64,000 nt of DNA from Selaginella moellendorffii. Its lineage: Eukaryota; Plantae; Lycopodiophyta. This document shows positions 10,093 through 28,821 of the stretch, in pieces. The notes below the pieces were generated by a model that did no database searches, had not been told where the DNA came from, and saw only the letters and a list, made by a program, of their open reading frames with translations. The position numbers and the translations under genes are program-made. The stretch is taken from the NCBI RefSeq assembly GCF_000143415.4, contig NW_003314300.1, positions 656,825 through 720,824 on the forward strand. The letters are read 5' to 3'. Position 1 is the first letter of the stretch. Each line of letters begins with the position of its first letter.

Positions 10093-10828
10093 ACAAAAAA
10101 TCTCATAAAAAGAAACTCATGTATCCACTGTTTATGCTGTAACACTGCTCACTCTAAACTGATTGGGGCATTGTTTTTCTCATGTCCAATTTAAACTTTG
10201 GAAACAATGTCAAGCATCTTGAGTTTCAGTCTGATTAATCACTTGAGAGCCAATAGATAATTGTGCTACTTAAGCAGCAGTGTAAAGAGAGACAATCGAT
10301 ATATTATGCAAAGAGGAGGTGCTCACCGCCGAGGGACACCTGCCGCAGCTCAGCACCCCCGATGTCGTGATCCCAGTGTTGCTACGCCGAGAACATGTCC
10401 TGTCCTGAAACGCACCATAGAGCCTCTCAAAATCTCATGGCTCGATTAACTGGCCTATCCTTTTAGCATGGCAGTTAGCAATAACACTGTGCATTACTTA
10501 GAAACCGTCAGAGATAACCAAGATCTCAGTAGGACGAACTTCTTAAAACTTGAGGAAAAAGATTGACAGATCTTGAGATCCTCTGGAGATATCAGCTGCT
10601 GGATGTGGTGGAGGCAGAGCAGAACCTCAGGTCAGACCCTGCTTATCTTTCTTACTATCACTCGCATGTCCAAGCCACTTCTTTGAGTGGTGCTAGACGC
10701 TCCACATCTTCTTCTCTCCAAACATTATAGTTTACTGTGTGTTCTTTCTCACAGCACGAAACCTCAGAGCTATAGAAACGTTAGCTTTCAATGAAAACAG
10801 TTCAAAGTTGATACTAGAGAAATGGACA

Positions 10829-12838
10829 ATGGCACATACTTTTTCCTCTCCTTTCGAGATCGTGGCACTACTAAAGTCCTGCAAGGATCTCGCCCAAGGC
10901 AGGCAAATCCACGCGCAGATTTCGGCTAGCAAACACCACAGCAAGAACATTGCCCTCTCCAACCTCCTCGTCAAGATGTACGGTAGATGTGGCAGCCTCG
11001 ACGATGCATGGCGGGTTTTCGACGGCCTGGATCAGCCCAACGTTTACTCCTGGAATATCATGATTCGAGCATATACCGAGAATGGGGATATGCTGCGAGC
11101 TCGCGCCCTCTTCGACAAGATGGCTCAAAAGAATGTGGTCTCCTGGACAACGATCATAGAATCTTATGGACGAAGCGGGAATATACTTGAAGCCGAGAAT
11201 CTTTTTGAGTTGATGCCTGACCGCGATGTAGTTTCTTGCAATGTGATGATCGAGGCATTTGCCCAGAACGGGCATCTCCAGGCAGCAAGGAGGCTGTTTA
11301 ACGAGATGGACGACAGGGATGTTGCCACGTGGACGACCATGATCACGGCCTACTCCCAACGGGGGGATCTGGTCGTCGCCCGCGAGTTCTTTGAGGGGAT
11401 GCCGTACAGGAGCATTGTTTCGTGGAGCGCCATGGTCACCGGGTACGGACAGAATGGCCAGCTCCAGCAGTCGCGCTGGGTGTTTGAATCCATGCCCGAG
11501 AGGAACCTTTTGACGTGGACAGTCATGGTTGCGGTGTATGCCCAGTGTGGGCATTTGGAGGAGGCCAAAGAGTTGTTTGATGCGATGCCGGAGAGGGATG
11601 TGGTGGCCTGGAATGCGATGATTACCGGGTTTGCGAAGAACTTTAAATTGATGGAAGCGCGCAAGATGTTTGATTCTATGCCTCGGAGGGACTTGGTGTC
11701 GTGGGCATTAATAATCTCTGCATATGCTCAGAACGGGAATATACTACAAGCGGAGGCTTTGTTTAACTTAATGCCTTGCCAAAACTTAATAGCGAAAAAC
11801 ACGATTATGGATGCGTATGCATCTCACGGTCAGATTGACAAAGCTAGATTCTTATTTGATCAGAGTCTAGAACGAAATCTAGTGTCGTGGACAACAATGA
11901 TCACTGCATATGCCAGAAACGGGCATCTGGAAATGGCAAAGGATCTGTTTGATCAGATGCCAGAGCGCGACACTGTTTCTTGGAACACTTTGATCAACGC
12001 TTACGCGCAGCAGGGATTTTTTGATGAGGCATTAGATATTCTCAGCCAGATGCCATGGAAAGATGTAGTGTCGTGGAACATTATCATCGCTGCAAATGCC
12101 CAGAACGGGGAAAACGAACAAGCAATCGCCCTCTTTCGGCAAATGGACCTTGAGGGCATTCCTGCTAACGAGATCACATTTATCACTGTCCTGGACGCCT
12201 GCACAACGATATCTGATCTAAAGATCGGGCGGGCAGTCCATGCCGAGGCAGTGACGAGTGGAATTGGAGGTGTGGAGGCAGTGACCACGGCTGCAATTAC
12301 AATGTGTGGGAAATCCGGGAGCTTGCCAGAGGCTACGAGGCTCTTTCAATCTATGCCGGTCAAGAGCACAGTAGCATGGGGCGCGATGATCACAATCTAC
12401 GCACAGGGTGGTCAAAGTGAAATCGCCCTTGATCTCTTTCGGGACATGGAGCTTGACGGGATCCAAGCGGATGGCATCACTTTCATCGCTGTGCTGTCAG
12501 CTTGCTGCCATTGTGGGAGATTTCGGGAGGGATGGGAGTTTTTTGTGAGCTTGAGGCTGGACTATGGAGTGGAACCCATGGCTGAGCACTATGAGTGTCT
12601 TGTGGATCAGTTGGGAAGAGCGGGCAAGCTGAGAGAGGCGGAAGAACTGATTGAGAGCATGCCATTCTATCCCACTCCAGTTGCTTATACTCAGCTCCTG
12701 AGTGCTGTAAAGACGCAGGAGGGTGATCAAGGTGATCGTGGCAATACCATCAGGTCTAGTGCTGAGAATTTGGCTACTAAAGTACAAGAACTAGATGATC
12801 AAAACTCGTCTAGTTATGTGCTTCTATCCACCTTGTAA
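10829..12838 (+). CDS. PLS-class PPR protein with many S-type repeats and truncated E domain, no DYW
   Basis: Tandem ~31-aa repeats (MPERDVVAWNAMITGFA...), ITFIAVLSACCHCG, EHYECLVDQLGRAG, ends SSSYVLLSTL. Intronless. Confidence 0.95.
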   Translation: MAHTFSSPFEIVALLKSCKDLAQGRQIHAQISASKHHSKNIALSNLLVKMYGRCGSLDDAWRVFDGLDQPNVYSWNIMIRAYTENGDMLRARALFDKMAQKNVVSWTTIIESYGRSGNILEAENLFELMPDRDVVSCNVMIEAFAQNGHLQAARRLFNEMDDRDVATWTTMITAYSQRGDLVVAREFFEGMPYRSIVSWSAMVTGYGQNGQLQQSRWVFESMPERNLLTWTVMVAVYAQCGHLEEAKELFDAMPERDVVAWNAMITGFAKNFKLMEARKMFDSMPRRDLVSWALIISAYAQNGNILQAEALFNLMPCQNLIAKNTIMDAYASHGQIDKARFLFDQSLERNLVSWTTMITAYARNGHLEMAKDLFDQMPERDTVSWNTLINAYAQQGFFDEALDILSQMPWKDVVSWNIIIAANAQNGENEQAIALFRQMDLEGIPANEITFITVLDACTTISDLKIGRAVHAEAVTSGIGGVEAVTTAAITMCGKSGSLPEATRLFQSMPVKSTVAWGAMITIYAQGGQSEIALDLFRDMELDGIQADGITFIAVLSACCHCGRFREGWEFFVSLRLDYGVEPMAEHYECLVDQLGRAGKLREAEELIESMPFYPTPVAYTQLLSAVKTQEGDQGDRGNTIRSSAENLATKVQELDDQNSSSYVLLSTL

Positions 12839-12885
12839 AAAGACAAAGATTTCACTTCGATGTATGTTTTAGCTTTCCAGCCACA

Positions 12886-14268
12886 TTATCTACCACTGAG
12901 CAACAACTGAATGGACTTTCGAAGTTCCATCCCTTCCTCCAGCTTTCCACCCCTCATAAGCATGTCAAAAATGCAAACATAGTGATCAACCATGCTCTCA
13001 ATCCCAAAGTCCTGGATCATGGAGATCAGGAAATGTTTGGCTTGGCAGAGTGATCCTCCATGACCACAAGAAGCAATAATGCCAATAAATGAGATCTCGT
13101 TTGGTGTCACGCCTTCAACAAGCATGCTATGGAAGCATTCAACAGCCCTTCCAAAATGCCCAGTTCGGGAAAGTGCTGTCAACATCGCCGTCCAGGAAAT
13201 GATACTTCGATTTGCCATTCTTGAGAAAACTATCTCTGCCCATTCAATCGATCCACCATTACCATACATGCTGATGACGGCATTTGCAATCTCAATCTCC
13301 TCCGGGTGTACAACTCTCTGGTGGATTTCCCTGCCCTGGAGAAGATCTGGGATGCTAGAACATGCCTCAATCACCGTAAGAAATGTGATCTTGTTTGGTG
13401 GCACATTCATCCTATAAAACAAATCAATTGCCTTCCTTGGCTGGTTATTGCGTGTGTAAGCACAGATCATTGCATTCCATGATGCTGCATTTTTATCTGG
13501 CATGCTCTCAAATAAAATAATTGCTTCTTCCAATTGCCCTGCCTGTCCATATGCGGCTACCATGGCGTTCCACACAATTGTGTCATATGAAGGCATTTGT
13601 ACAAACAGACAATGGGCTTCTTCCAGGTGCCCTGCATGGGCATTTGCTACAACCATAGTTGTCCACGTCACTACATCCTTTTCAAGCATGGACTGAAAAA
13701 CTTGTTTAGATTTAGTTAAATTACCGTCTTGGCAATATGCCGACAATATCGTGTTACACGAGAAAATATCCCATTCAAGCATTCTATTTAGCAGAGTTTC
13801 TGCACTATGCAGATTATTTGTTTTGGCAAAAGCTGCTAGCATTGCATTTGATGCCATGAGATTTTTTTCTGGCATTTTTTCAAAAAAGAGATTTGCCTTA
13901 TCAACACAAGAACATGTGGCATATCCAACGACAAGTGCAACCCATGATTCAATGTCTCGTTCAGGGATGCGATGAAACAAAATTTCTGCTTCTTGTAAAT
14001 GCCCTGATTTGGCATATGCAGCGATCATGTTGTTCCAGGTAAGAATGTTTCTGTAGGGCATCTGGTTGAAGACGTCCAGCGCCCGTTCAATGAGACCACA
14101 CTTTCCGTAAAGTTTGATGATGAGAGTGTTGAGGTAGACATTGGCATGGTGCTCACTTCTTGAAATTTCTGAATGGAGACAAATCCCCGTTCCTAGATTC
14201 TTTGTGTTATAACATGCTTTAAGAAGAGTGCCCAGTCTTCCCACATCAGTTAGGGTTGATTGAAGCAT
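12886..14268 (-). CDS. PLS-class PPR protein lacking E/DYW
   Basis: Repeats of the MPDKNAASWNAMICAY type, PNEISFIGIIASCGHGG, VDHYVCIFDMLMRGG. First ATG at 14268. Confidence 0.9.
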   Translation of the reverse strand: MLQSTLTDVGRLGTLLKACYNTKNLGTGICLHSEISRSEHHANVYLNTLIIKLYGKCGLIERALDVFNQMPYRNILTWNNMIAAYAKSGHLQEAEILFHRIPERDIESWVALVVGYATCSCVDKANLFFEKMPEKNLMASNAMLAAFAKTNNLHSAETLLNRMLEWDIFSCNTILSAYCQDGNLTKSKQVFQSMLEKDVVTWTTMVVANAHAGHLEEAHCLFVQMPSYDTIVWNAMVAAYGQAGQLEEAIILFESMPDKNAASWNAMICAYTRNNQPRKAIDLFYRMNVPPNKITFLTVIEACSSIPDLLQGREIHQRVVHPEEIEIANAVISMYGNGGSIEWAEIVFSRMANRSIISWTAMLTALSRTGHFGRAVECFHSMLVEGVTPNEISFIGIIASCGHGGSLCQAKHFLISMIQDFGIESMVDHYVCIFDMLMRGGKLEEGMELRKSIQLLLSGR

Positions 14269-14680
14269 GCTAGAGCAAATCAATCAATCTATACATTTAT
14301 TTCAAAGAATGTTTAAAATGTATAGCAGAGAATATTATTAACAAATCCTATTACAAATTAAATTTTTTGCACTGCAACATTTTAGTATTTTTATAGGTGT
14401 TTTAATTTAGTATCTTGTCAAATATTAAAATTAACTATGAATTATTTATTATTTAAAATTAGAAAATATTAAGAGTATTAATACAAATATGCTACACTTG
14501 CAATGACAAATATAAGGTGGCAAAACAACGTGCTTTGCTTGTAAGTAAAATTTAGGAATGTCTAATTAATGCTTGTGAGGTCAACTTTACCTCATTCTTG
14601 AGATTACCTTTATAATTTCATCAATTAATGATTTCTAAACAAAAAAAAACTCAGAGAGAAAGAGAGAGATCAAATAACAT

Positions 14681-14827
14681 TGGCAGGCTTGCAACGGTAG
14701 AGATCTAGGAAGTCAAGGATGGTGAAGATGGCAAAGCTCTATTTCTTTGTCCACTGACAGTGTGAATATTTGTGAATGTGATGTGGAGTACGACTTGGGG
14801 GATGCACAGTGATTACTTGCTGAGTAA
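14681..14827 (+). pseudogene. Deleted relic of the 3' end of the kelch-like gene (inverted copy)
   Basis: Collinear blocks match the reverse complement of ~24504-24780 (GTAGAGAT..AAGGATGGTGAAG; ATTTCTTTGT.CACTGAC; TACGACTTGGGGGATGC; TTACTTGCTGAG-stop = LLAE*), with several internal deletions. Confidence 0.8.
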
Positions 14828-14975
14828 AAGAGCTAGATCATTCTTTCTTCCGTTTGTTCATTCGAAACATGTTTCTCATTGTCTCTTGACACGTTTTCAC
14901 AATCAACAATCTCCGGAACTTAAGTTCCATCCTTGTTTAAAACCGAAATGTAATTGGAGATGGAAAATATTGATG

Positions 14976-16294
<1,319 letters not shown>

Positions 16295-16346
16295 CGCTCT
16301 CTGGAAGGACAAGTTAAAGAACAACACCAGAAAGTACACTTATCAC

Positions 16347-18681
16347 TTACCAAAAGGTAACTTGCTGAGAGAGTATCAGATCCGATAACGTTTTACCATG
16401 CCTGTCAATCCTCCTTGAACAAGTCACCCCTCCATCCAGTACATTCCTTACAACAACGTTGAGAGAATGTATCCCTTCGACCAGATAAACAGAAACTTCA
16501 GCTTCTCCGGCCTGACCAACGAAGGCCGTCGCGAATACATTTTTCACCCATTTGGCCGTTACGACCTCTTGCAGTCGAGCTATGTCGTCGGTGCAATGCG
16601 GAATCAAGCTGAAGTTCAGTGTATTCCCCTTGTCACCAGTTCTGCTGTGAGCAATGTGATATAGAGGAATGCCAACACCTCTTGGAGCTGGAGCTGTCTT
16701 TGCAGATGGACTTGGCGTCGGTAAAACATCCATGCAAACCACGGAGTTTGATTGACAACACTCGAGCCTCCTCTGTGTGCCTGAAAACGCAGTTTTCCAG
16801 GACACGGCATCGCGGGAGACTAATTTCTTTTTCAGTGTTATTTCTCTCTTGATCCCTGAACTGCAAACGTATGTCTCGTCAGTAAAAACAAAAGACAATT
16901 ATGAACGACCATACCGTATGCCACCTCCTCCAGCAGGTCCATTCGTGTAGAGCGCTCCAAACTCTCGGACAAGTGCAGCAGCCTCCTCTTCTGTTCCAAA
17001 TGATCCATCGACACGCAGCCGAGCTTCGTGACAGACTACTGGCGGACTGGGACTTGCGAACAGACTATCTTTACCAATGACGCACGAAAGAATTCTTTGC
17101 TGAATTCCAGGGAACGATTCCTCCAACCACGACCGAACCTGCAAAATACTAGTTGCTAAGGTGAGACGACAATCTTAAGCGACAAACCAGTTTATCGGAT
17201 AGATTGGCACGCTCGTCGCAATATAAGCCACCGTACGAGATTTCTCCCCAACCTTTCCAGCCACAAAACTAGACAAACAACAAGTCAGGACAGTACCTTT
17301 GTGCTGCTAAACTTACGGATGGGATCAGGCGAAGTAGCAAGCTGGGAGAACAATGAGCCTCAGCGCCGCTTACAATTACTTTGTCTTTTGAGAGCTCCCT
17401 GAAATTGACCTTGCGGAGATCTAGAATCTGTTTTGCAAGGAACATAAGAAGCGTTAAATGAAAGGGTGCAGTCTGTACCACATCAGGGGTGATATACGAA
17501 GAAGGATCGTCCACTTCATATATAAGCTGCTCAGAGCATGTTCTCTCACTTATTTCTCCCCCAGAGCCTTCAGCTTTGGCGACGACTACTTTTCCGTCCC
17601 AGGAAATGTCAGCGTATGGCAGCGAAACGTCAAGAAGTTCTGGAAACGGAAGACTTCGAAGCTTGTCACCTGCATTTGTTTTTATTTGAGTTAACAGTTT
17701 CGGAAGAGCTGGGACAGAAAGCACAACCTGGATGCACGTAGTACCCTCCTGTCAGCTGGCATCCACATTCCAGGAGATGAGCAGCGACCGCACCTTGAGC
17801 AAGCTCTTTGTAGCTGTTCCAGTTCCAGCCAAGCTCGAAAATCTAGAAAGCATTCCTTGGAGATGTCTTTGCAAGAACTAGCTTCTTACCATCGGTCCCA
17901 GGAAAAGCGCAACATCGGCCACACGACTGGTGATGATAACATGAGGCCGACATTGCTGTAATACTTGCACGATTGGAGCTGCTCCAAGGTAAGTGCTAGA
18001 ACCCTGTCGTCAACTAGTTAGATCGGATAAACATCGAGCCATATCAATCACTTACATCAGAAGGAAGCGGATACTCGTAGGCCACAGCCACAGAGATATG
18101 AATCCCAAGTTTTGAAGAGAGCTTGAGAACCTCGTCTTGTGCTCCCAAAGGATCCACTGAAAAGACAAAGTTCCTTAAACATCTCTTTTAAAAAGCAGGA
18201 GAGACCTCCGCCCATGTTTGTGACGATGCAAACTCCTTTCTCCACTGCTACTGGAAGAAGAGAAGTCATCCATTCCGAGACTAGAATTTTTATCTGGAAA
18301 CCATCAGCCTTGCTAGAAGATGGAAGAACCAAGACGAAAAACATAAAAAGACAAGCTCTTACTTCGAGGATCATAGCCTTGGCCACCGGCGGCTTTAGCT
18401 TCCACACGCTCCACAAAGGTCCGCTCGGCGAGACACTCTAGAACCAAGTACTGCAAGCTTGGCACCCGATGGAGGAGCTTCAATGCCGCGCGGGGCCTGT
18501 CGCCAGCAAAGCCGGCGCCACATCCAATCCTCACAACATCTTTCTGCCGCAAAGGATTCTCCCTCTGAAAGAAAGAGGATCGAACGCACGATTCGAGCTA
18601 CTTGCTACTCACCAGCGTCACTGTGCTCTCGGACGATGGATCGGCGTGGAGCTCAAACACGCGATCGTTGCCAGTGGCCAT
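16347..18681 (-). CDS. AtuA/DUF1446 acyclic-terpene-utilisation-family protein, multi-exon
   Basis: RIGCGAGFAGDRP, YLVLECLAERT, GYDPR, TNMG, STYLGAAPIV, TSRVADVALF, AAHLLECGCQLTGGY, YITPDV, LYTNGPAGGGG, AHSRTGDKGN, LDGGVTCSRRIDRHGKT. Confidence 0.92.
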
Positions 18682-18719
18682 AGGACCTCCCTCCCGCCCT
18701 AAGATATAAATCTAATTAA

Positions 18720-21700
18720 TGTGGAAGTTTCCAAATACAAGTTTGCTTAACAGCATATTTTCTAAGCAAAAGGCCATTGTTTTCCCTATTTTATTCGAAT
18801 ATATAGAATGGTCATGAAGTATATATGATAAAGTTTGTAAATATATCCAAGAAAAAACTAAGATAACCAATATTCCTCTCATCAAATTATGTAGAACAAT
18901 TTACAATTTGAATGAGATAACTAGAGTTACTTTTTAGCTATTTAGTTTACTTTGACAAGCTTAACTATAATAGAACATTTTTTCCCTAAATTTCTAAATA
19001 TAACTGGTGAATATTCAAGTATCAATAACTATTAATTACACCCCTTTTCCTAATCAATTAAGGATTTTAAGATAAAGTGTTTTTTGAATAATATTGGGCT
19101 GGGTGACTTCTCGGGAAGTCTAAACTTAAGAACTTATAAATTTATTACTTTTGTTAATATTTTGTTTTCAAGAATTTCCTTTACAATCTCTTTGATTTTC
19201 ATCTTTTCTTTATTTTATTAAAGGCTATAATGACAATAGGTGGTTTAAGTCCAAGGATATTTAGGTTTTTAGTTCTCTAATCAAAACCTTTAATTATGAA
19301 TATGAAGTAAAAATCTTCTCTCCTCTAATATATATTTCAAGTTGAAATATCACTTTTGTTTCATTAAAGGCTATAATTCACAATAATGTGGGTGAGGTGG
19401 TTTAAGTCCAAGGATATTTAAGTTTTTAGTTCTCTAGTCAAAACCTTTAACTATGAATGTGAAGCAAAAATCTTCTCTCCTCCTCTAATATGTAATTCAA
19501 GTTGAAATATCACTCTTAGGCCATCCCTAAATCTTGCAAGTTCATCATTAGTGATAATTATAGTAGTCTATAATGCTTTCTAGTTGTCTTGCTTGTCAAT
19601 TTCCCTAAATCTTACAAGTTCATCATTAGTGATAATTATAGTAGTTTACAATGCTTTCTAGTTTTTTTGCTTATCAATTTATATGTGCCTATTTTCTTAT
19701 AGATCTTTGAGCATTTCTTATAAACTCTTGAATTTAAATTTTCTGAGAGGTCATTTAGCCTAAACCTAAAGACACTTAGCCTTAAGTATCCCAAAACTTT
19801 TAATTAATTGGAAAAAGGGGTATATTTTTATTCATGGGCCTTTTCCCTTTATATTTAAACCCCATAAATCATCTCTTAAATCATTCTTTTTTTTTTTTTA
19901 CACTTCCATCCTCATATAATGGCAACATCTTTTTAAAATTATACCACTGTTAATAGTTTTAGGTCTAAATGTAATTAGAGGATGAAGACCAAACAAAACA
20001 TCCACAACTAGTGTAAATAAAGACCATACACATCCATTGTAGTGATATATATCCCCATGAAGAACTTCTATATAAAAAATATCATGAAATGAGCATTTTA
20101 ATTGTTAATATTCATGGTTCATTATGATAGGCATTTTAAATATGTCAATAACACATTTAATTAAGATCAAGAGACATTTTTTAAAGCTCTACAATCAATC
20201 ATCTAGTTTATGACACCATTATTATTGGATTCAATTGTTAATTTTGCAAGAATATATGGTTGTATCATACCAGTTGCAAGGCAAAAATATCCTCACAATA
20301 GCCTATGTGGCAAAGTTATAATGCATGTTAGCACACATGCCCATCTAATGTAAGAAGTGATATAGAGGAGTTTTGTGAATCAATTTAAAAAAGCAAAAAC
20401 TACAAGGAACTCAACTATAGCACCAAAATATATTCAAAAGATTATGTTGAAGAATTTTATTGTTGGGCTACTAAAAGAATCTATACTAGCTTATGGGAGA
20501 TATTATGTGGTCTGCAACCTAATACAAGCTTAAAGAGGTATATTTGGTAATTTTAAGAAATATCTTCCTCATTTTTTGCTTTATATAAGATTGTGCAATT
20601 CTAAAAAGGGGAAAAGTGCATCCTTAAACTAAAATAGACCTAATCATTTAATAATACATAGTTACATAATGTTGAATATTAAGGTATCTTTGACCTTAAT
20701 TAGTTTAATTACTATATCCTTATAATTTTATAGTAGTAATTTATTTCCAAACTAAGTTGTTAATGAAAATGAGGACCCTTTGGTTATAAGATGTCTATGA
20801 TAAACTTGGATCTTGTCTCATATTAAATATGATTGGCTCAAGTGACTTAGTAAATTCTTAGATATATTGCATTGGGTATGAATCTTTACATATTTGTCAA
20901 ATCTAATGCAAACTATAGAGTAGCTTTCACAGAAAAGGAAAATAATTAGGAATAGAGCCATTTGTTAAAATATTCATAAATGGATGAAAAAGAAAGTGAT
21001 TCTAACTACCTGAATAATGACATTTGCCATTGAAAAGGCACACTACAAAGCACATGCCTTGGGCTTCATCCACTTTACATATTGGTTTTCCTTTGGTTGT
21101 GAAGATGGTGGGATGGACTTTGGAGCTACAATCTTGACATTATTCTATTCTAAGAACCCACTTCTTGACTGAGCTAGCTCAAGTGTCAGACGAAGAAAGC
21201 ACATCCTAATAAGTTAAATCTCTACAATATTTTTCTTAATAAGATATATTTTGCAAATACAAATTTTAGATCTAATCAATTTACCTTTGAGCAATATGGT
21301 AGCTCATATACAATCTTTACCATTTTAAAAAACATTTTGTGATAGTCTTTCAAAGTGACATTGCAATGTATTATACTATTATAACTCTTGTTGCCATTGC
21401 TTCCACTAAATGCCACAAAACGTATAATCTTGAAAGTCACCACATTACAATTTTTTTAGGTGAGGTAGTTATTTTTCTCTACATGATTTGTTGTGGTCTC
21501 AATCATTGCATTTGTCTCTAGAATCATCCCTCTCTTATGTATGGTTTGGCAATGGGATTACTAATGTGGCTCCTCACTCTTGAACTACTGCGAGAAAAAT
21601 TGCAAAAGTTAAAACTACCAACACTTAGGATGTTTTTCCCAGAGTGCAAAAGGTAATTGATAAAAAGAATCTAGTTTCAAATTTAATATTATGAACCTAA

Positions 21701-22372: not shown

Positions 22373-22846
22373 GACAATAGCTGATCTGATCGATCAGCCC
22401 CCCTCCCCCGTTTGCCCCAATTGCTGTAGCCAGAGGGAGCACCTGGCTCGCAAATTCCTCCGGATTCAAGCTGCTGGTTGCACTTGATCAGCTCCAAGAG
22501 TGCTTGCTGCTAGCGAATATAATCGGGGACACAAGGGGGATGCAAACGCATTTGAAGTTCAAAAGCTCAATATGCTTCTTTCTGGCACACGAAGTTTCCT
22601 CACAGTCTTGTCCAACTCGGAAATAAAGATAGCACGAAATGTGTGCCTCGTACTCCTCGCAACTATAGTCAACTATGAGTTGCGTGCCTCAGACTCTTCG
22701 CCCGGACGAGAGAGGCCGGAGCATTCCATCAGTGCATGGTTTTTTTACGGTCTCGATCAGTGATGCGGTCACTATTTGGCCAACGCGATTCCAACCCATG
22801 GCAAGCTAGTCTTAGACGGATCTTGACTTTTACCAATGGCAAGTGG

Positions 22847-22992
22847 GAGGTTCTTAAATTCTCTTCAAAGCTTGGGATTCATATTTCTGTGGCTGTAGCC
22901 TACAAGTATCCACTTCCTTCTGATGCAAGTGATTGATATGGCTCGATTTTTATCCGATGTACCTACAGCAAGGTCGGCCTTGGAGCACCTCC
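22847..22992 (+). pseudogene. Inverted relic of an internal AtuA exon/intron segment, fused to the upstream region of OPR copy 2
   Basis: GAGGTTCT..CTCTTCAAA.CTTGGGATTCATAT.TCTGTGGCTGT.GCCTAC.AGTATCC.CTTCCTTCTGATG.AAGTGATTGATATGGCTCGAT..CCTTGGAGCA.CTCC equals the reverse complement of ~17975-18143. Confidence 0.88.
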
Positions 22993-23027
22993 TTGGAGGT
23001 GTTGCTCTTTAACTTGTCCTTGCAGCA

Positions 23028-24345
<1,318 letters not shown>

Positions 24346-24503: not shown

Positions 24504-26483
24504 TCACTCAGCAAGTAATCCCCAGATGTTTTTTTCAATTGGATAGCACGTCCACTGCGCATCCCCCAAGTCGTATTCCATCACCCTGCTCGTCTCCAGC
24601 GAGTCTTTGTTCTCCATCACATTCACAAATATCTTGCTCACACCGTCAGTGCACAAAGAAATACACCCTTGCCATGCCCGAGCTTTGATCGTGGTCACAA
24701 GTTTGCTCCTCGTCCCTTCACCATCCTTGACCTCCCAAATCTCTACTGTCTCAGTGTCTTCAATGTCAAGCGATCTTCCCACCACAAACAGCCTCCCGCC
24801 ACAAGCAACCATGCTTGATCTCACGTTCTTGTTTCGACCATCGGGCTCAGTGGGCGAGAGAACTCCATCCTTTGGAAAGATATCGTCCCACACATTGTTA
24901 ACGCTGTCATACGCAATCACCCGCATCTTGTTGTTGAGCCTCCAACCCTTGACACCCTCTGGCACTTTCCCCCTGTAGAACTGGATGCTAGACAAGTAAA
25001 TTTTGTCCCTGCAGCTGGAGCTCGGCCCAGAGACCGAGCAATGCCAGCCGTAGCTCCGGGCGTCAACTCTGCATGGGCCTATCGGCACGTCCCACGACTT
25101 CGTAAGGGAGTTGTATCGGTGTACGTGAGCATTGGATTCTTCCGAGTTAACTGTCTCCAGGAAGAAGTAATACAGAAAGTACGTGCCGGGCGCTTGCTGC
25201 TGCTGCTTCAGAGTTATGCCAATGAATTCACAAGGGAAGGGAGAATATTCGTCACTCTCTTTTTGTTTTGTTGCCTTGTTCTGTATATCCTGGCCGAAGG
25301 TGGTGATGTTTGGGATTTCCTCCCAGCAGTACGTATCTGTGCTGCCAATATAGATCCGTGCAGGGAATTGTACTAAGGCACGATACTTCCGTAACTCCGG
25401 CACGCAAATCAGTCCCAGCTCTTTCAACAACGCTCCTTCCGCAGGCTTACAATCACAAGAACGAGGAAGCTCGAGAGCGCGTACGCTTGAATTCGAGATC
25501 AGCCATAGCACTGATCCATCTTGACAAGGCACAGCCTGTCGTGTTATGTGAATTGCCTTGACAATGTGAGGCTTGCAAGGACGATGCTTATGACCCGAAA
25601 ACATCCTCTTTCCACCCTCTCTTTCTTTGTTAGAACCATAGCTCGACCACTCGTTGCTCTCGATGTGGTACTCAATAACACGTCCCGGAGTGCGTGCTAT
25701 GATCTTGTGGTTTCCATCACTTGCGAAGAGGATGGTCGTGTTTCTGGCGTTGTAAAAATACTCGGAGATGCAAATCATTTTGTCCGCCACCAATTTCCAG
25801 ACCCTCAAGAACCTGTGGCATGAGGTTCTACCGATTACGTACAAGCTCCCGCGGCACACAACCAGTGTGGGGTCAATGATTGAGTGACTGGAACGAATAT
25901 CCCAGCCGCCTTTGTCGACGAGAACTCCCTGATTCACGCCCTCCAGTTCTTCGCTGTCCATGTCATATGTTGCAATATCCATCGTCACACAACTGCCAGT
26001 AGCAATGTAAGCCTTGGATCCATCAGCCGCGAGCATAAAAGAGCAGCGTCGCAAATTCCACTCCTTCTTGCAACTCCACAAACCCGTCTCCGAATCAAAC
26101 ACCACTACCCGGATGAAGGTTGAATCTTTGGAGATGAACCCAAACAGCTTGTAAGCAAAGAAGTTCCCCACCACCTTGTGTCTCATAGCAAACCCTATGA
26201 AGTATTCACCCCGGCTGATCTCGCTCAGCTGTATGGTTCTCCAGTTTTCCAGCAGTGGATTGCCAACAACAACAAAGGAAGCAGAAAGACTTTTCGAATT
26301 ATACTCATCCGAGGTCGCCTGATACAAGCACAGAAGGCCCAAAGCGTTTTCGATGGCTCCAACCTCCATGCCTGCACAGTTTTCCGGGAGATTGAAAAAC
26401 TCCTCAGTATGCGTCGATAGATCATAAGCCCAGAGCTTGTAAGGCCTGTCCCACCGTGGGCTGGACGTCGCAAACAACCACAT
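24504..26483 (-). CDS. Intronless F-box-associated/kelch-like beta-propeller protein with two internal repeats and no F-box, copy A
   Basis: ~659 aa from ATG 26483. GLLCL..VVVGNPLLENWRTI, VFDSETGLW, LVVCRGSLYVIGR / MVACGGRLFVVGR, EYHIESNEW / EYDLGDAQW. Confidence 0.65.
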   Translation of the reverse strand: MWLFATSSPRWDRPYKLWAYDLSTHTEEFFNLPENCAGMEVGAIENALGLLCLYQATSDEYNSKSLSASFVVVGNPLLENWRTIQLSEISRGEYFIGFAMRHKVVGNFFAYKLFGFISKDSTFIRVVVFDSETGLWSCKKEWNLRRCSFMLAADGSKAYIATGSCVTMDIATYDMDSEELEGVNQGVLVDKGGWDIRSSHSIIDPTLVVCRGSLYVIGRTSCHRFLRVWKLVADKMICISEYFYNARNTTILFASDGNHKIIARTPGRVIEYHIESNEWSSYGSNKEREGGKRMFSGHKHRPCKPHIVKAIHITRQAVPCQDGSVLWLISNSSVRALELPRSCDCKPAEGALLKELGLICVPELRKYRALVQFPARIYIGSTDTYCWEEIPNITTFGQDIQNKATKQKESDEYSPFPCEFIGITLKQQQQAPGTYFLYYFFLETVNSEESNAHVHRYNSLTKSWDVPIGPCRVDARSYGWHCSVSGPSSSCRDKIYLSSIQFYRGKVPEGVKGWRLNNKMRVIAYDSVNNVWDDIFPKDGVLSPTEPDGRNKNVRSSMVACGGRLFVVGRSLDIEDTETVEIWEVKDGEGTRSKLVTTIKARAWQGCISLCTDGVSKIFVNVMENKDSLETSRVMEYDLGDAQWTCYPIEKNIWGLLAE

Positions 26484-26548
26484 GGTATAAACCAATCAAC
26501 CAAACCCTAGATAGAAAAAGCTTTTGGTATAAGCCCTAATCAAGCAAA

Positions 26549-26791: not shown

Positions 26792-28753
26792 TCACTCAGC
26801 AAGTAATCCCCATATGTTTTCTTCAATTGGATAGCACGTCCACTGCGCATCCCCCAAGTCGTATTCCATCACCCTGCTCGTCTCCAGCGAGAATTTGTTC
26901 TCCATCACATTCACAAATATCTTGCTCACACCGTCAGTGCACAAAGAAATACACCCTTGCCATGCCCGAGCTTTGATCGTGGTCACAAGTTTGCTCGTCC
27001 CTTCACCATCCTTGACCTCCCAAATCTCTACTGTCTCAGTGTCTTCAATGTCAAGCGATCTTCCCACCACAAACAGCCTCCCGCCACAAGCAACCATGCT
27101 TGATCTCACGTTCTTGTTTCGACCATCGGGCTCAGTGGGCGAGAGAACTCCATCCTTTGGAAAGATATCGTCCCACACATTGTTAACGCTGTCATACGCA
27201 ATCGCCCGCATCTTGTTGTTGAGCCTCCAACCCTTGACACCCTCTGGCACTTTCCCCCTGTAGAACTGGATGCTAGACAAGTAAATTTTGTCCCTGCAGC
27301 TGGAGCTCGGCCCAGAGACCGAGCAATGCCAGCCGTAGCTCCGGGCGTCAACTCTGCATGGGCCTATCGGCACGTCCCACGACTTCGTAAGGGAGTTGTA
27401 TCGGTGTACGTGAACATTGGATTCTTCCAAGTTAACTGTCTCCAGGAAGAAGTAATACAGAAAGTACGTGCCGGGCGCTTGCTGCTGCTGCTTCAGAGTT
27501 ATGCCAATGAATTCACAAGGGAAGGGAGAATATTCGTCACTCTCTTTTTGTTTTGTTGCCTTGTTCTGTATATCCTGGCCGAAGGTGGTGATGTTTGGGA
27601 TTTCCTCCCAGCAGTACGTATCTGTGCTGCCAATATAGATCCGTGCAGGGAATTGTACTAAGGCACGATACTTCCGTAACTCCGGCACGCAAATCAGTCC
27701 CAGCTCTTTCAACAACGCTCCTTCCGCAGGCTTACAATCACAAGAACGAGGAAGCTCGAGAGCGCGTACGCTTGAATTCGAGATCAGCCATAGCACTGAT
27801 CCATCTTGACAAGGCACAGCCTGTCGTGTTATGTGAATTGCCTTGACAATGTGAGGCTTGCAAGGACGATGCTTATGACCCGAAAACATCCTCTTTCCAC
27901 CCTCTCTTTCTTTGTTAGAACCATAGCTCGACCACTCGTTGCTCTCGATGTGGTACTCAATAACATGTTCCGGAGTGCGTGCTATGATCTTGTGGTTTCC
28001 ATCACTTGCGAAGAGGATGGTCGTGTTTCTGGCGTTGTAAAAATACTCGGAGATGCAAATCATTTTGTCCGCCACCAATTTCCAGACCCTCAAGAACCTG
28101 TGGCATGAGGTTCTACCGATTACGTACAAGCTCCCGCGGCACACAACCAGTGTGGGGTCAATGATTGAGTGACTGGAACGAATATCCCAGCCGCCTTTGT
28201 CGACGAGAACTCCCTGATTCACGCCCTCCAGTTCTTCGCTGTCCATGTCATATGTTGCAATATCCATCGTCACACAACTGCCAGTAGCAATGTAAGCCTT
28301 GGATCCATCAGCCGCGAGCATAAAAGAGCAGCGTCGCAAATTCCACTCCTTCTTGCAACTCCACAAACCCGTCTCCGAATCAAACACCACTACCCGGATG
28401 AAGGTTGAATCTTTGGAGATGAACCCAAACAGCTTGTAAGCAAAGAAGTTCCCCACCACCTTGTGTCTCATAGCAAACCCTATGAAGTATTCACCCCGGC
28501 TGATCTCGCTCAGCTGTATGGTTCTCCAGTTTTCCAGCAGTGGATTGCCAACAACAACAAAGGAAGCAGAACGACTTTTCGAATCATACTGATACAAGCA
28601 CAGAAGGCCCAAAGCGTTTTCGATGGCTCCAACCACCATGCCTGCACAGTTTTCCGGGAGATTGAAAAACTCCTCAGTATGCGTCGATAGATCATAAGCC
28701 CAGAGCTTGTAAGGCCTGTCCCACCGTGGGCTGGACGTCGCAAACAACCACAT
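26792..28753 (-). CDS. Intronless kelch-like beta-propeller protein, copy B
   Basis: ~653 aa. Differs from copy A by substitutions and two in-frame indels (15 bp and 3 bp). Confidence 0.65.
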   Translation of the reverse strand: MWLFATSSPRWDRPYKLWAYDLSTHTEEFFNLPENCAGMVVGAIENALGLLCLYQYDSKSRSASFVVVGNPLLENWRTIQLSEISRGEYFIGFAMRHKVVGNFFAYKLFGFISKDSTFIRVVVFDSETGLWSCKKEWNLRRCSFMLAADGSKAYIATGSCVTMDIATYDMDSEELEGVNQGVLVDKGGWDIRSSHSIIDPTLVVCRGSLYVIGRTSCHRFLRVWKLVADKMICISEYFYNARNTTILFASDGNHKIIARTPEHVIEYHIESNEWSSYGSNKEREGGKRMFSGHKHRPCKPHIVKAIHITRQAVPCQDGSVLWLISNSSVRALELPRSCDCKPAEGALLKELGLICVPELRKYRALVQFPARIYIGSTDTYCWEEIPNITTFGQDIQNKATKQKESDEYSPFPCEFIGITLKQQQQAPGTYFLYYFFLETVNLEESNVHVHRYNSLTKSWDVPIGPCRVDARSYGWHCSVSGPSSSCRDKIYLSSIQFYRGKVPEGVKGWRLNNKMRAIAYDSVNNVWDDIFPKDGVLSPTEPDGRNKNVRSSMVACGGRLFVVGRSLDIEDTETVEIWEVKDGEGTSKLVTTIKARAWQGCISLCTDGVSKIFVNVMENKFSLETSRVMEYDLGDAQWTCYPIEENIWGLLAE

Positions 28754-28821
28754 GGTATAAACCAATCAATCAAACCCTAGCCCTAGATAGAAGCTTTTGG
28801 TATAAGCCCTAATCAAGCAAA

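What the first reader, a model, noticed from the sequence alone, without database searches (positions are those of the whole stretch)
16294..16360. AtuA and OPR linked by a 50-nt intron whose splicing creates the AtuA stop: candidate dicistronic or overlapping unit
Seen: on the minus strand, AtuA ends ...CAG CAA GTT ACC TTT TG|gtaagt...ctttaacttgtccttccag|A GAGCG ATG(OPR). The genomic AtuA stop (TAA, 16347-16349) lies inside a perfect GTAAGT donor, and a pyrimidine tract plus CAG sits 6 nt before the OPR ATG. Intron 16301-16350 is the size of the other introns here. Splicing gives TTT TGA gagcg ATG: AtuA stops and OPR starts 5 nt later. The 52-bp gap leaves no room for a polyA site and a promoter. 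Known: AtuA belongs to the Pseudomonas acyclic-terpene utilisation (atu) cluster, and OYE-family enzymes reduce alpha,beta-unsaturated carbonyls such as citral. Inference: either a dicistronic mRNA with stop/re-initiation coupling, or an OPR promoter inside the last AtuA exon, joining two enzymes that could plausibly act on acyclic terpenoids or enals.
Basis: partly seen in the sequence, partly recalled or inferred. Interest (0 to 1): 0.85.

Follow-up and report, generated by a model that had tools for sequence, protein, structure and literature searches.

The report
Two spikemoss genes spliced into one RNA
In the spikemoss Selaginella moellendorffii, a 50-base intron between two complete enzyme genes (AtuA-like and OPR) really is spliced out, leaving both reading frames 5 bases apart in assembled RNA; whether one molecule carries and translates both is not yet shown.

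Summary
Transcript-like contigs from four independent studies show the GT..AG intron 16301-16350 (minus strand) removed. This joins the last AtuA coding exon to the first OPR exon and gives ...UUU UGA GAGCG AUG. One 3,029-nt contig carries both complete ORFs (AtuA 597 aa, OPR 362 aa).

Words that overlap the unspliced gap were found only in DNA-like runs, not in 18 RNA-like runs. Both haplotypes of the public S. moellendorffii assembly have an identical junction, annotated there as two separate genes.

AtuA therefore has no 3' end of its own. Its stop codon lies on the splice junction and its 3' UTR is OPR sequence.

Not shown: that one molecule spans both ORFs (contigs cannot prove this), where OPR transcripts start, or that OPR is translated from the joint RNA.
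- Leaky scanning is excluded: 26 AUGs lie in between, with no depletion.
- No TURBS motif was found.
- OPR-A is under purifying selection, so it is translated somehow.

The proposed terpene or enal link is not supported. The adjacency is absent in pea, pistachio, a moss and 79 of 80 bacterial AtuA loci, and a duplicated OPR copy that lost AtuA is still expressed.

Verdict: a real co-transcribed or overlapping gene pair, a new member of the known class of plant read-through/bicistronic transcripts. Translational coupling is an open, testable possibility.

The parts
16351..18681 (-). AtuA-like gene (DUF1446), coding part. It has 11 exons: 18613-18681, 18363-18564, 18206-18280, 18055-18156, 17890-18002, 17726-17842, 17479-17667, 17317-17427, 17185-17268, 16915-17135, 16351-16860. 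The product is 597 aa when the junction intron is spliced.
   Evidence: Splice joints in contigs of four runs. Spliced ORF. Pfam AtuA and AtuA_ferredoxin. 100% match to SELMODRAFT_109756.
16301..16350 (-). Intergenic 50-nt GT..AG intron. Its donor GTAAGT (16350-16345) overlaps the genomic TAA stop (16347-16349). Its acceptor is ...CCTTCCAG, ending at 16301.
   Evidence: Joint 16300->16351 in X1, X5 and X6 contigs, with loose ends in X18. Words overlapping the unspliced form were held only by DNA-like runs.
16295..16352 (-). Stop-start junction after splicing: TG (16352-16351) plus A (16300) makes UGA, GAGCG (16299-16295) is the 5-nt spacer, and the OPR AUG follows at 16294.
   Evidence: The junction is identical in both haplotypes of the public assembly.
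14976..16294 (-). OPR-A gene (Old Yellow Enzyme family, OPR1-like), coding part. It has 5 exons: 16227-16294, 16031-16173, 15845-15973, 15346-15781, 14976-15288 (stop TAA at 14976-14978). The product is 362 aa.
   Evidence: Joints, ORF, PF00724, best solved-structure matches tomato and Arabidopsis OPR1. Allelic dN/dS is 0.18.
14832..14975 (-). OPR-A 3' UTR, and probably the shared 3' end of the unit. Contigs end at about 14832-14896. The only poly(A)-signal-like hexamer downstream of the AtuA stop is AATGAA at 14862-14857.
   Evidence: Contig pieces and hexamer scan. Contigs cannot fix RNA ends, so the 3' end is an inference.
22847..23027 (+). Upstream region of copy B. It holds an AtuA remnant (equivalent to 18133-18015, about 90% identical) and the last 28 nt of the junction intron with its acceptor (22998-23025). 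The 1,686 bp in between, including the whole last AtuA exon, is missing.
   Evidence: blastn and alignment. X6 record 10 reads through this region unspliced.
23028..24345 (+). OPR copy B, the inverted duplicate (365 aa, 93% DNA identity to copy A), expressed without AtuA.
   Evidence: tblastn and blastn. B-specific letters in contigs of X5, X6 and X18. Annotated as a separate 365-aa gene in the public assembly.

Best explanation
AtuA and OPR-A form one transcription unit. Transcription from the AtuA promoter (upstream of 18681) does not stop after AtuA, because the gene has no 3' UTR or poly(A) signal of its own. It runs on through OPR-A to the OPR 3' end near 14830-14900.

All 15 short introns are removed, including the 50-nt intron whose donor overlaps the AtuA stop. 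The mature RNA of about 3.0-3.1 kb carries two complete ORFs separated by UGA-GAGCG-AUG.

Shown:
- The junction splice.
- The lack of the unspliced form in RNA-like assemblies.
- A contig with both ORFs.
- An identical junction in both haplotypes.

Follows from the data:
- Any AtuA mRNA that has a stop codon must cross this junction into OPR exon 1, so AtuA's 3' UTR is OPR sequence.

Inferred, not shown:
- AtuA is translated by ordinary cap-dependent scanning.
- OPR-A, which is under purifying selection, is translated either by low-level termination-reinitiation across the 5-nt spacer or, more likely for most of the protein, from shorter transcripts that start inside the AtuA gene and share the same spliced leader.

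The pairing looks like a lineage-specific accident of a very compact genome rather than a metabolic operon.
For: -: the joint 16300->16351 with GT..AG appears in X1, X5 and X6, with loose ends in X18 (four studies). X1 record 1 (3,029 nt) runs from 14896 to 18693 through both ORFs. The AtuA contigs of X5, X6 and X18 continue 28-52 nt past the junction into OPR exon 1, up to the point where copies A and B diverge.
- of 6 sampled words that all overlap the unspliced intron, none is held by the RNA-like runs X1-X18. Only DNA-like runs hold them.
- both haplotypes of GCA_000143415.2 have the same 52-bp gap and the same intron sequence.
- spliced contigs carry hap1-type letters (X6) or hap2-type letters (X5), so both alleles are spliced.
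- there is no AAUAAA-like hexamer between the AtuA stop and AATGAA at 14862.
- in X5, at the A/B-diagnostic site 15378, A-type depth is 31.8 against 31.4 for the AtuA contig. This fits equal abundance, though contig depth is a crude measure.
- the OPR-A alleles differ by 10 synonymous and 6 nonsynonymous changes (dN/dS 0.18; binomial p = 0.0014 against neutrality).
- no second S. moellendorffii AtuA appears among the 120 best hits, so this is probably the only AtuA gene, and it must be expressed from this RNA.
Against: - Contigs are paths through overlapping short reads. A contig across two genes does not prove a single molecule, and the read-laying output says so itself.
- The runs are only guessed to be RNA. 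That reading rests on every intron being absent from their contigs.
- A full-length joint RNA would give AtuA a 3' UTR of about 1.24 kb. It would also carry four exon junctions more than 50 nt downstream of the stop, the first 73 nt away. In plants these features normally trigger nonsense-mediated decay, which argues against it being a stable main mRNA.
- In X18, A-type OPR depth at site 15378 (96) is 1.7 times the AtuA depth (56). This hints at extra OPR-only transcripts.
- Reinitiation after a 597-codon ORF is normally very inefficient. No TURBS-like UGGGA motif lies in the 130 nt before the stop.
- The test on the unspliced gap used only 6 sampled words.
Confidence: 0.6

Rival explanations
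1. There are two overlapping but separate mRNAs. AtuA mRNAs cross the spliced junction but are cleaved and polyadenylated at a weak site early in OPR. OPR mRNAs start from a promoter inside the AtuA gene, for example within the last exon, and use the 50-nt intron as a 5' UTR intron. The long contig would then be an assembly of the two overlapping species.
For: - De Bruijn contigs merge overlapping transcripts (caveat printed).
- The last AUG before the OPR start lies about 50 nt upstream of the AtuA stop and opens only a 7-codon ORF. A start site in the last ~50 nt of AtuA would therefore give a clean, short leader.
- OPR-A depth exceeds AtuA depth in X18.
- It avoids the decay and reinitiation problems of a joint RNA.
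- Plant poly(A) signals are degenerate, so the lack of an AAUAAA hexamer is weak evidence.
Against: - No contig branch or loose end suggests an RNA end in OPR exon 1 or intron 1 (table 7), although low-abundance tips are usually dropped.
- In X1 the whole locus is a single unbranched contig.
- In X5, A-type OPR depth equals AtuA depth.
- Copy B is expressed without the last AtuA exon, so that exon is not an indispensable OPR promoter.
Confidence: 0.3
2. The RNA is a true translationally coupled dicistronic mRNA. Ribosomes that finish AtuA at the splice-made UGA reinitiate at the OPR AUG 5 nt downstream, and this is the main source of OPR-A protein. Splicing would serve to set the stop-start distance.
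For: - The spliced spacer is 5 nt, and the OPR AUG has a strong context (G at -3, G at +4).
- In Chlamydomonas, a short unstructured junction after a full-length upstream ORF sufficed to express a downstream marker, presumably by reinitiation (PMC5144980). PMC11892635 describes that spacer as 6 nt.
- OPR-A is under purifying selection.
- Translation of the downstream ORF would clear the downstream exon junctions and could protect the RNA from decay (inference).
Against: - Reinitiation efficiency falls steeply with upstream ORF length (discussed in PMC11892635), and here the upstream ORF is 597 codons.
- There is no TURBS motif.
- Copy B manages with a monocistronic long leader.
- There are no ribosome or protein data.
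Confidence: 0.2
3. The junction splice is a rare by-product or an assembly artefact. The functional AtuA mRNA would be unspliced and polyadenylated just past TAA, with OPR using a start site in the 52-bp gap.
For: Both v1 gene models treat the genes as separate, with the TAA stop. Read-through chimeras at low level are common in eukaryotes (general knowledge).
Against: - The joint appears in four studies and on both alleles, with canonical GT..AG.
- The contigs that carry the whole AtuA ORF are the ones that carry the joint.
- No RNA-like run holds words of the unspliced gap.
Confidence: 0.04
4. The pair is a metabolic mini-operon: AtuA and OPR act in one pathway on acyclic terpenoids or enals, and co-transcription is selected for co-regulation.
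For: OYE enzymes reduce activated alkenes such as citral, and AtuA is named after the Pseudomonas acyclic terpene utilisation cluster (both general knowledge). Cotton polycistron partners tend to share pathways (PMC6797763).
Against: - The adjacency is absent in Pistacia, Pisum and Ceratodon and in an unidentified plant's AtuA transcript contig.
- Only 1 of 80 bacterial AtuA loci has an OYE-like gene within 8 kb.
- Copy B lost AtuA and stays intact and expressed.
- The biochemical function of AtuA is unknown.
Confidence: 0.05

Closest known systems
Read-through / polycistronic transcripts of adjacent plant genes (cotton Iso-Seq polycistrons, PMC6797763) and cis-spliced conjoined genes in animals (general knowledge)
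   Same: Same-strand neighbours with a very short inter-ORF distance. The RNA joins them, canonical splicing crosses the intergenic space, and both ORFs stay intact.
   Different: Here the upstream gene appears to have no terminator or 3' UTR of its own, so the joint form is not an optional extra isoform. The intergenic space is almost entirely one intron, whose donor overlaps the stop codon. Long-read proof, which the cotton work has, is lacking here.
Green-algal bicistronic loci (PMC7896298, PMC11892635) and the conserved CDC26-TTM3 locus of land plants (cited in PMC11892635)
   Same: Nuclear, capped-mRNA-type organisation with two ORFs a few nucleotides to tens of nucleotides apart, within Viridiplantae.
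   Different: Those loci have a short ORF1, a weak ORF1 Kozak context and AUG depletion upstream of ORF2, and they work by leaky scanning. Here ORF1 is 597 codons with 26 intervening AUGs against 30 +/- 5 expected, so leaky scanning cannot reach OPR.
Termination-reinitiation after long ORFs (calicivirus / influenza B TURBS; hypovirus UAAUG; PMC3035654, PMC2699510, PMC10275272) and the 6-nt-spacer bicistronic vectors of Chlamydomonas (PMC5144980)
   Same: A long upstream ORF whose stop lies within a few nucleotides of the downstream AUG.
   Different: No 18S-complementary UGGGA motif was found in the 130 nt upstream. This is a cellular gene pair, and no translation data exist.
[quoted passage not shown]
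   Same: A land-plant nuclear transcript carrying two full-size enzyme ORFs.
   Different: The PRO1 partners catalyse consecutive steps of one pathway. No pathway link is evident for AtuA and OPR, and here the stop-start spacing is produced by splicing.
APC15 / DNA polymerase iota shared transcript in the same genome (scan finding s1-363755)
   Same: S. moellendorffii, a tiny intergenic gap, and assembled RNA running through both genes, also without single-molecule proof.
   Different: That pair has a small upstream ORF, like the algal loci. This pair has a large one and an intergenic intron. I did not test that finding.

Membership tests
Read-through / cis-spliced transcript of adjacent genes | RNA joins exons of two same-strand neighbouring genes through a canonical splice that is absent from DNA | tested here: met
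   The joint 16300->16351 (GT..AG) appears in contigs from four studies. The unspliced words are held only by DNA-like runs.
Bicistronic / polycistronic nuclear mRNA | A single capped, polyadenylated molecule contains both complete ORFs | tested here: inconclusive
   A 3,029-nt contig contains both ORFs, but contigs cannot prove one molecule. No long reads or raw reads could be laid because the read laying cap was one call.
Bicistronic / polycistronic nuclear mRNA | Both ORFs are translated from that molecule | not testable with these tools
   No ribosome profiling or proteomics was available. The only indirect evidence is purifying selection on OPR-A (dN/dS 0.18), which does not say which RNA is translated.
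Green-algal type bicistron (leaky scanning) | Short ORF1 with AUG depletion between the ORF1 start and the ORF2 start | tested here: not met
   ORF1 is 597 codons. There are 26 AUGs in between (3 in strong context) against 30.3 +/- 5.1 in shuffles.
Green-algal type bicistron (leaky scanning) | Weak Kozak context at ORF1 and strong context at ORF2 | tested here: met
   The AtuA start is GGTCCT AUG G (C at -3) and the OPR start is AGAGCG AUG G (G at -3, G at +4). On its own this is not diagnostic.
TURBS-type termination-reinitiation | Stop and restart codons overlap or lie within a few nucleotides | tested here: met
   UGA GAGCG AUG after splicing.
TURBS-type termination-reinitiation | An upstream motif (UGGGA) complementary to 18S rRNA helix 26 | tested here: not met
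   There is no TGGGA in the 130 nt before the OPR AUG.
AtuA / DUF1446 family | AtuA domain (PF07287) followed by the AtuA ferredoxin-like domain (PF23544), with the conserved C-terminal ...DGGV..SRR.DRHGK..SDL motif | tested here: met
   Pfam hits, alignment of C-termini and full-length alignment with plant, amoeba and alga homologues.
12-oxophytodienoate reductase / Old Yellow Enzyme family | Oxidored_FMN (PF00724) TIM-barrel across the whole protein, with closest solved relatives being plant OPRs | tested here: met
   PF00724 hits on three exons. The best PDB matches are tomato OPR1 (1icp, E = 5e-54) and Arabidopsis OPR1. Substrate preference was not tested.
Metabolic gene pair / operon-like cluster | The adjacency of the two families recurs in other genomes | tested here: not met
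   Absent in Pistacia, Pisum and Ceratodon. Only 1 of 80 bacterial AtuA loci has an OYE-like gene within 8 kb. Other Selaginella species could not be examined.

The most novel reading that the evidence does not exclude
In a vascular plant, a cellular mRNA with two full-size enzyme ORFs is translated by termination-reinitiation. Removal of an intergenic mini-intron builds the upstream stop codon and sets a 5-nt stop-start distance, so splicing acts as the switch that couples OPR synthesis to AtuA translation. Together with the other tight gene pairs noted in this genome, it would mean that S. moellendorffii uses operon-like nuclear units with large upstream ORFs.
Probability: 0.18. Interest if true: 0.85.

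Novelty: new member of a known kind. Interest (0 to 1): 0.55.

Why it matters
Land-plant nuclear genes are taken to be monocistronic, and the few accepted exceptions have a small upstream ORF. Here a conserved and probably single-copy gene (AtuA) has no 3' end of its own, and its RNA runs by splicing into a second complete enzyme gene.

If long reads confirm one molecule, this is a clean, easily tested case for three questions:
- How a plant handles a stop codon followed by a 1.2-kb, intron-containing tail, given nonsense-mediated decay.
- Whether reinitiation after a long ORF occurs in plants.
- How gene boundaries erode in very compact genomes.

It also matters for annotation. The public gene models miss the junction intron, and the RefSeq model of AtuA is a truncated 296-aa product.

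Tried and rejected
1. Leaky scanning as the route to OPR. Rejected because 26 AUGs lie in between, with no depletion.

2. An in-frame AtuA-OPR fusion or stop-codon read-through product. Rejected because both the spliced and unspliced forms stop, the OPR AUG is out of frame with AtuA, and read-through of UGA would hit TAA after 21 codons.

3. The intron as an ancestral AtuA 3' UTR intron. Rejected for pea, whose mRNA contig is colinear with the genome through the stop and the 3' UTR.

4. Looking for the arrangement in other Selaginella species. This failed.
- No close relatives besides the two S. moellendorffii haplotypes turned up.
- Diphasiastrum P0370 was not on record.
- The exact 597-aa spliced product was not on record either.
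- The run index finds only near-identical DNA.

5. Exact look-ups of neighbouring intronless genes to name the organism found nothing. The organism was identified later through.

6. The first profile search did not retrieve the Selaginella protein. Re-ordering the alignment did.

7. Literature searches for nuclear polycistronic or bicistronic RNAs in Selaginella found nothing relevant. A search for plant AtuA/DUF1446 work was swamped by the Portuguese word 'atua'.

Full report
**The observation**

On the minus strand the last AtuA exon ends ...CAG CAA GTT ACC TTT TGG TAA. The letters GTAAGT begin at 16350, so the genomic TAA (16347-16349) lies inside a consensus donor. A pyrimidine tract and CAG end at 16301, followed by AGAGCG and the OPR ATG at 16294.

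Pfam confirms the gene identities. The last exon ORF matches AtuA_ferredoxin (E = 1e-41) and an upstream exon matches AtuA. Three downstream exons match Oxidored_FMN. The largest OPR exon is closest to tomato and Arabidopsis OPR1 among solved structures.

**RNA evidence**

Seventeen RNA-like runs of one organism hold 28-54% of the sampled words of window 14700-18750, and one run of unknown kind (X18) holds 50%; together they come from ten studies. This is what exon-only RNA would give.

I laid the contigs of four runs from four studies on 14300-19100. All 15 predicted introns of the two genes appear as joints with CT..AC ends on the plus strand (GT..AG on the minus strand), and they measure 47-82 nt.

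The joint 16300->16351 (skips 50) is present in contigs of X1, X5 and X6. In X18 the two loose ends at 16301 and 16351 read exactly the sequence across the joint.

X1 record 1 is a single 3,029-nt contig running from 14896 to 18693. It has every intron out except the first AtuA intron, so it holds both complete ORFs. In X5, X6 and X18 the contig that carries the whole AtuA coding region continues 28-52 nt beyond the junction into OPR exon 1. It ends where the two OPR copies begin to differ.

Rebuilding the spliced RNA gives AtuA of 597 aa ending ...QQVTF-UGA, then GAGCG, then OPR of 362 aa.

A second run search used window 16271-16380, where every 31-letter word overlaps the intron. Holders were found only among DNA-like runs (about 200 million letters, the size of the two-haplotype assembly) and small runs of one sample. 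None of X1-X18 held these words. Only 6 words were sampled, so this is supportive rather than strong.

**Organism and public annotation**

A profile search led by the last AtuA exon found SELMODRAFT_109756 of Selaginella moellendorffii at 100% identity. Its cluster also holds the allele SELMODRAFT_186105 (598 aa, ending ...VTFW) and a 296-aa RefSeq model that stops in a retained intron.

Both haplotype scaffolds of GCA_000143415.2 show AtuA, a 52-bp gap and a 362-aa OPR, annotated as separate genes. Their junction sequence is identical to the window.

The letters in the spliced contigs match haplotype 1 in X6 and haplotype 2 in X5, so both alleles are spliced.

**What follows**

The AtuA C-terminus lies at the natural end of the family, with or without the final W. 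Splicing therefore does not change the protein in any meaningful way.

The important consequence is different. Every AtuA mRNA with a stop codon must either retain the intron, which was not seen in RNA-like runs, or cross the junction into OPR exon 1. AtuA thus has no 3' UTR of its own.

Between its stop and the OPR 3' UTR there is no AAUAAA-like hexamer. The first is AATGAA at 14862, about 30 nt before the point where contigs end.

No second S. moellendorffii AtuA appeared among the best 120 hits. This RNA is therefore probably how the plant's only AtuA is expressed.

The simplest reading is a transcription unit that runs from the AtuA promoter to the OPR poly(A) site.

**Limits**

Contigs cannot prove a single molecule, a start, an end or a level, and the tool states this itself. 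A rival reading remains open, with about 0.3 probability. In it, AtuA mRNAs end early in OPR, and OPR mRNAs start inside AtuA and share the spliced leader.

Contig depths give mixed hints. In X5, A-type depth at the A/B-diagnostic site 15378 is 31.8 against 31.4 for the AtuA contig. In X18 it is 96 against 56.

A joint RNA would also carry a 3' UTR of about 1.24 kb with four exon junctions downstream of the AtuA stop, the first 73 nt away. By established knowledge of plant nonsense-mediated decay, these features should destabilise it.

**How OPR could be translated**

Leaky scanning, the mechanism shown for green-algal bicistrons (PMC11892635), is excluded. There are 26 AUGs between the two starts, against 30 +/- 5 expected by shuffling, and three of them are in strong context.

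Reinitiation is conceivable:
- The spacer is 5 nt.
- The OPR AUG has G at -3 and G at +4.
- In Chlamydomonas, a short unstructured junction sequence after a full-length ORF sufficed to express a downstream marker (PMC5144980); PMC11892635 describes that spacer as 6 nt.

Against it, the upstream ORF is 597 codons and no TURBS-like UGGGA motif is present.

OPR-A is not decaying. Its two alleles differ by 10 synonymous and 6 nonsynonymous changes, giving dN/dS of 0.18 and p = 0.0014 against neutrality. It is therefore translated by some route.

**The duplicate copy**

An inverted duplicate lies at 22847-24345 on the plus strand. OPR copy B is 93% identical to copy A. Upstream of it are a 119-nt AtuA remnant and the last 28 nt of the junction intron with its acceptor. 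The 1,686 bp in between, including the whole last AtuA exon, is missing.

The AtuA-intron-OPR layout therefore predates the duplication.

X6 record 10 (depth 270) carries copy-B letters. It reads unspliced through this region for at least 364 nt upstream of the ATG, a leader that contains 8 AUGs. OPR copy B is thus expressed without AtuA.

**Functional link**

AtuA homologues of about 640 aa occur throughout land plants, in a streptophyte alga and in Dictyostelium. They are mostly labelled uncharacterised.

The downstream neighbour is not an OPR elsewhere:
- In Pistacia it is a LIM gene.
- In Pisum nothing lies within 10 kb, and the pea mRNA contig is monocistronic.
- In the moss Ceratodon the neighbours are unrelated genes on the opposite strand.
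- An AtuA transcript contig of an unidentified plant has 980 nt of non-OPR sequence after the stop.

Among 80 bacterial AtuA loci with 8-kb flanks, only one has an OYE-like gene. The terpenoid/enal pairing idea has no comparative support.

**Comparison with known systems and verdict**

Read-through or polycistronic transcripts of neighbouring genes are known in several groups:
- Cotton (PMC6797763).
- Fungi and green algae (PMC7896298).
- Land plants, for CDC26-TTM3 and tomato PRO1, both known here only through citations in those papers.

The scan also has a followed-up case in this same genome, APC15 and Pol iota (s1-363755, not tested by me), plus many unchecked first-reader notes of tight gene pairs.

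This locus belongs to that known kind. Its particular features are a large upstream ORF, an upstream gene with no terminator of its own, and an intergenic intron that overlaps the stop codon and reduces the spacer to 5 nt.

I rate it a new member of a known kind with interest 0.55. The more novel reading, splicing-set termination-reinitiation in a vascular plant, has a probability of about 0.18.

Noticed in passing
window 22664-24345 (+): OPR copy B is transcribed with an unspliced leader of at least 364 nt. The leader runs through an AtuA exon remnant and holds 8 upstream AUGs, yet this contig has the highest depth of all (270 in X6). How this copy is translated, and where its promoter lies, is unknown.
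   Followed up: partly
window 18681 (minus strand, AtuA start codon): One X18 contig diverges exactly at the AtuA ATG into 91 letters that are not found anywhere in the 64-kb window. On the RNA strand the 30 letters the tool printed, those next to the ATG, end ...ATGCACCAGCAGCAG just before ATGGCC. This could be an alternative upstream exon from outside the window, a structural variant or a chimeric contig.
   Followed up: partly
window 18565-18612 (-): The first AtuA intron is retained in the X1 contig, with one extra A at 18571. X18 holds both the retained and the spliced form.
   Followed up: no
window 17428-17478 (-); protein P0407: The RefSeq model XP_024521001.1 for this AtuA gene is a 296-aa product that ends in a retained intron. 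The older model EFJ19997.1 is partial at 576 aa. Neither public model reflects the spliced 597-aa product.
   Followed up: partly
window 17317 (-): The last base of an AtuA exon, next to the donor, differs between the window (C on the minus strand) and the contigs of X1, X5 and X18 (T). This matches the haplotype-2 difference at that position. It made the aligner report a non-canonical CT..CG joint.
   Followed up: yes
window 24504-26495 and 26792-28765 (-): Two tandem intronless paralogues of about 655 aa both begin MWLFATSSPRWD. At the corresponding place the public assembly annotates beta-propeller (At3g26010-like) genes.
   Followed up: no
window 10739-14283: Two intronless PPR-type genes lie directly downstream of OPR-A, one on each strand. 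The minus-strand one starts about 550 nt after the OPR 3' end.
   Followed up: no
L003 (Pistacia) and protein P0270 (Turnera): In eudicots the AtuA homologue is followed closely by a LIM-domain gene (935 bp away in Pistacia). One Turnera gene model fuses the two into an 815-aa AtuA-LIM protein, which is probably an annotation merger of close neighbours.
   Followed up: no
runs X19, X20, X25, X26 (sample S19): Many very small runs of one sample (3-8 million letters each) hold the unspliced gap, or 20% of the locus, or nothing. They look like low-coverage DNA subsets.
   Followed up: no
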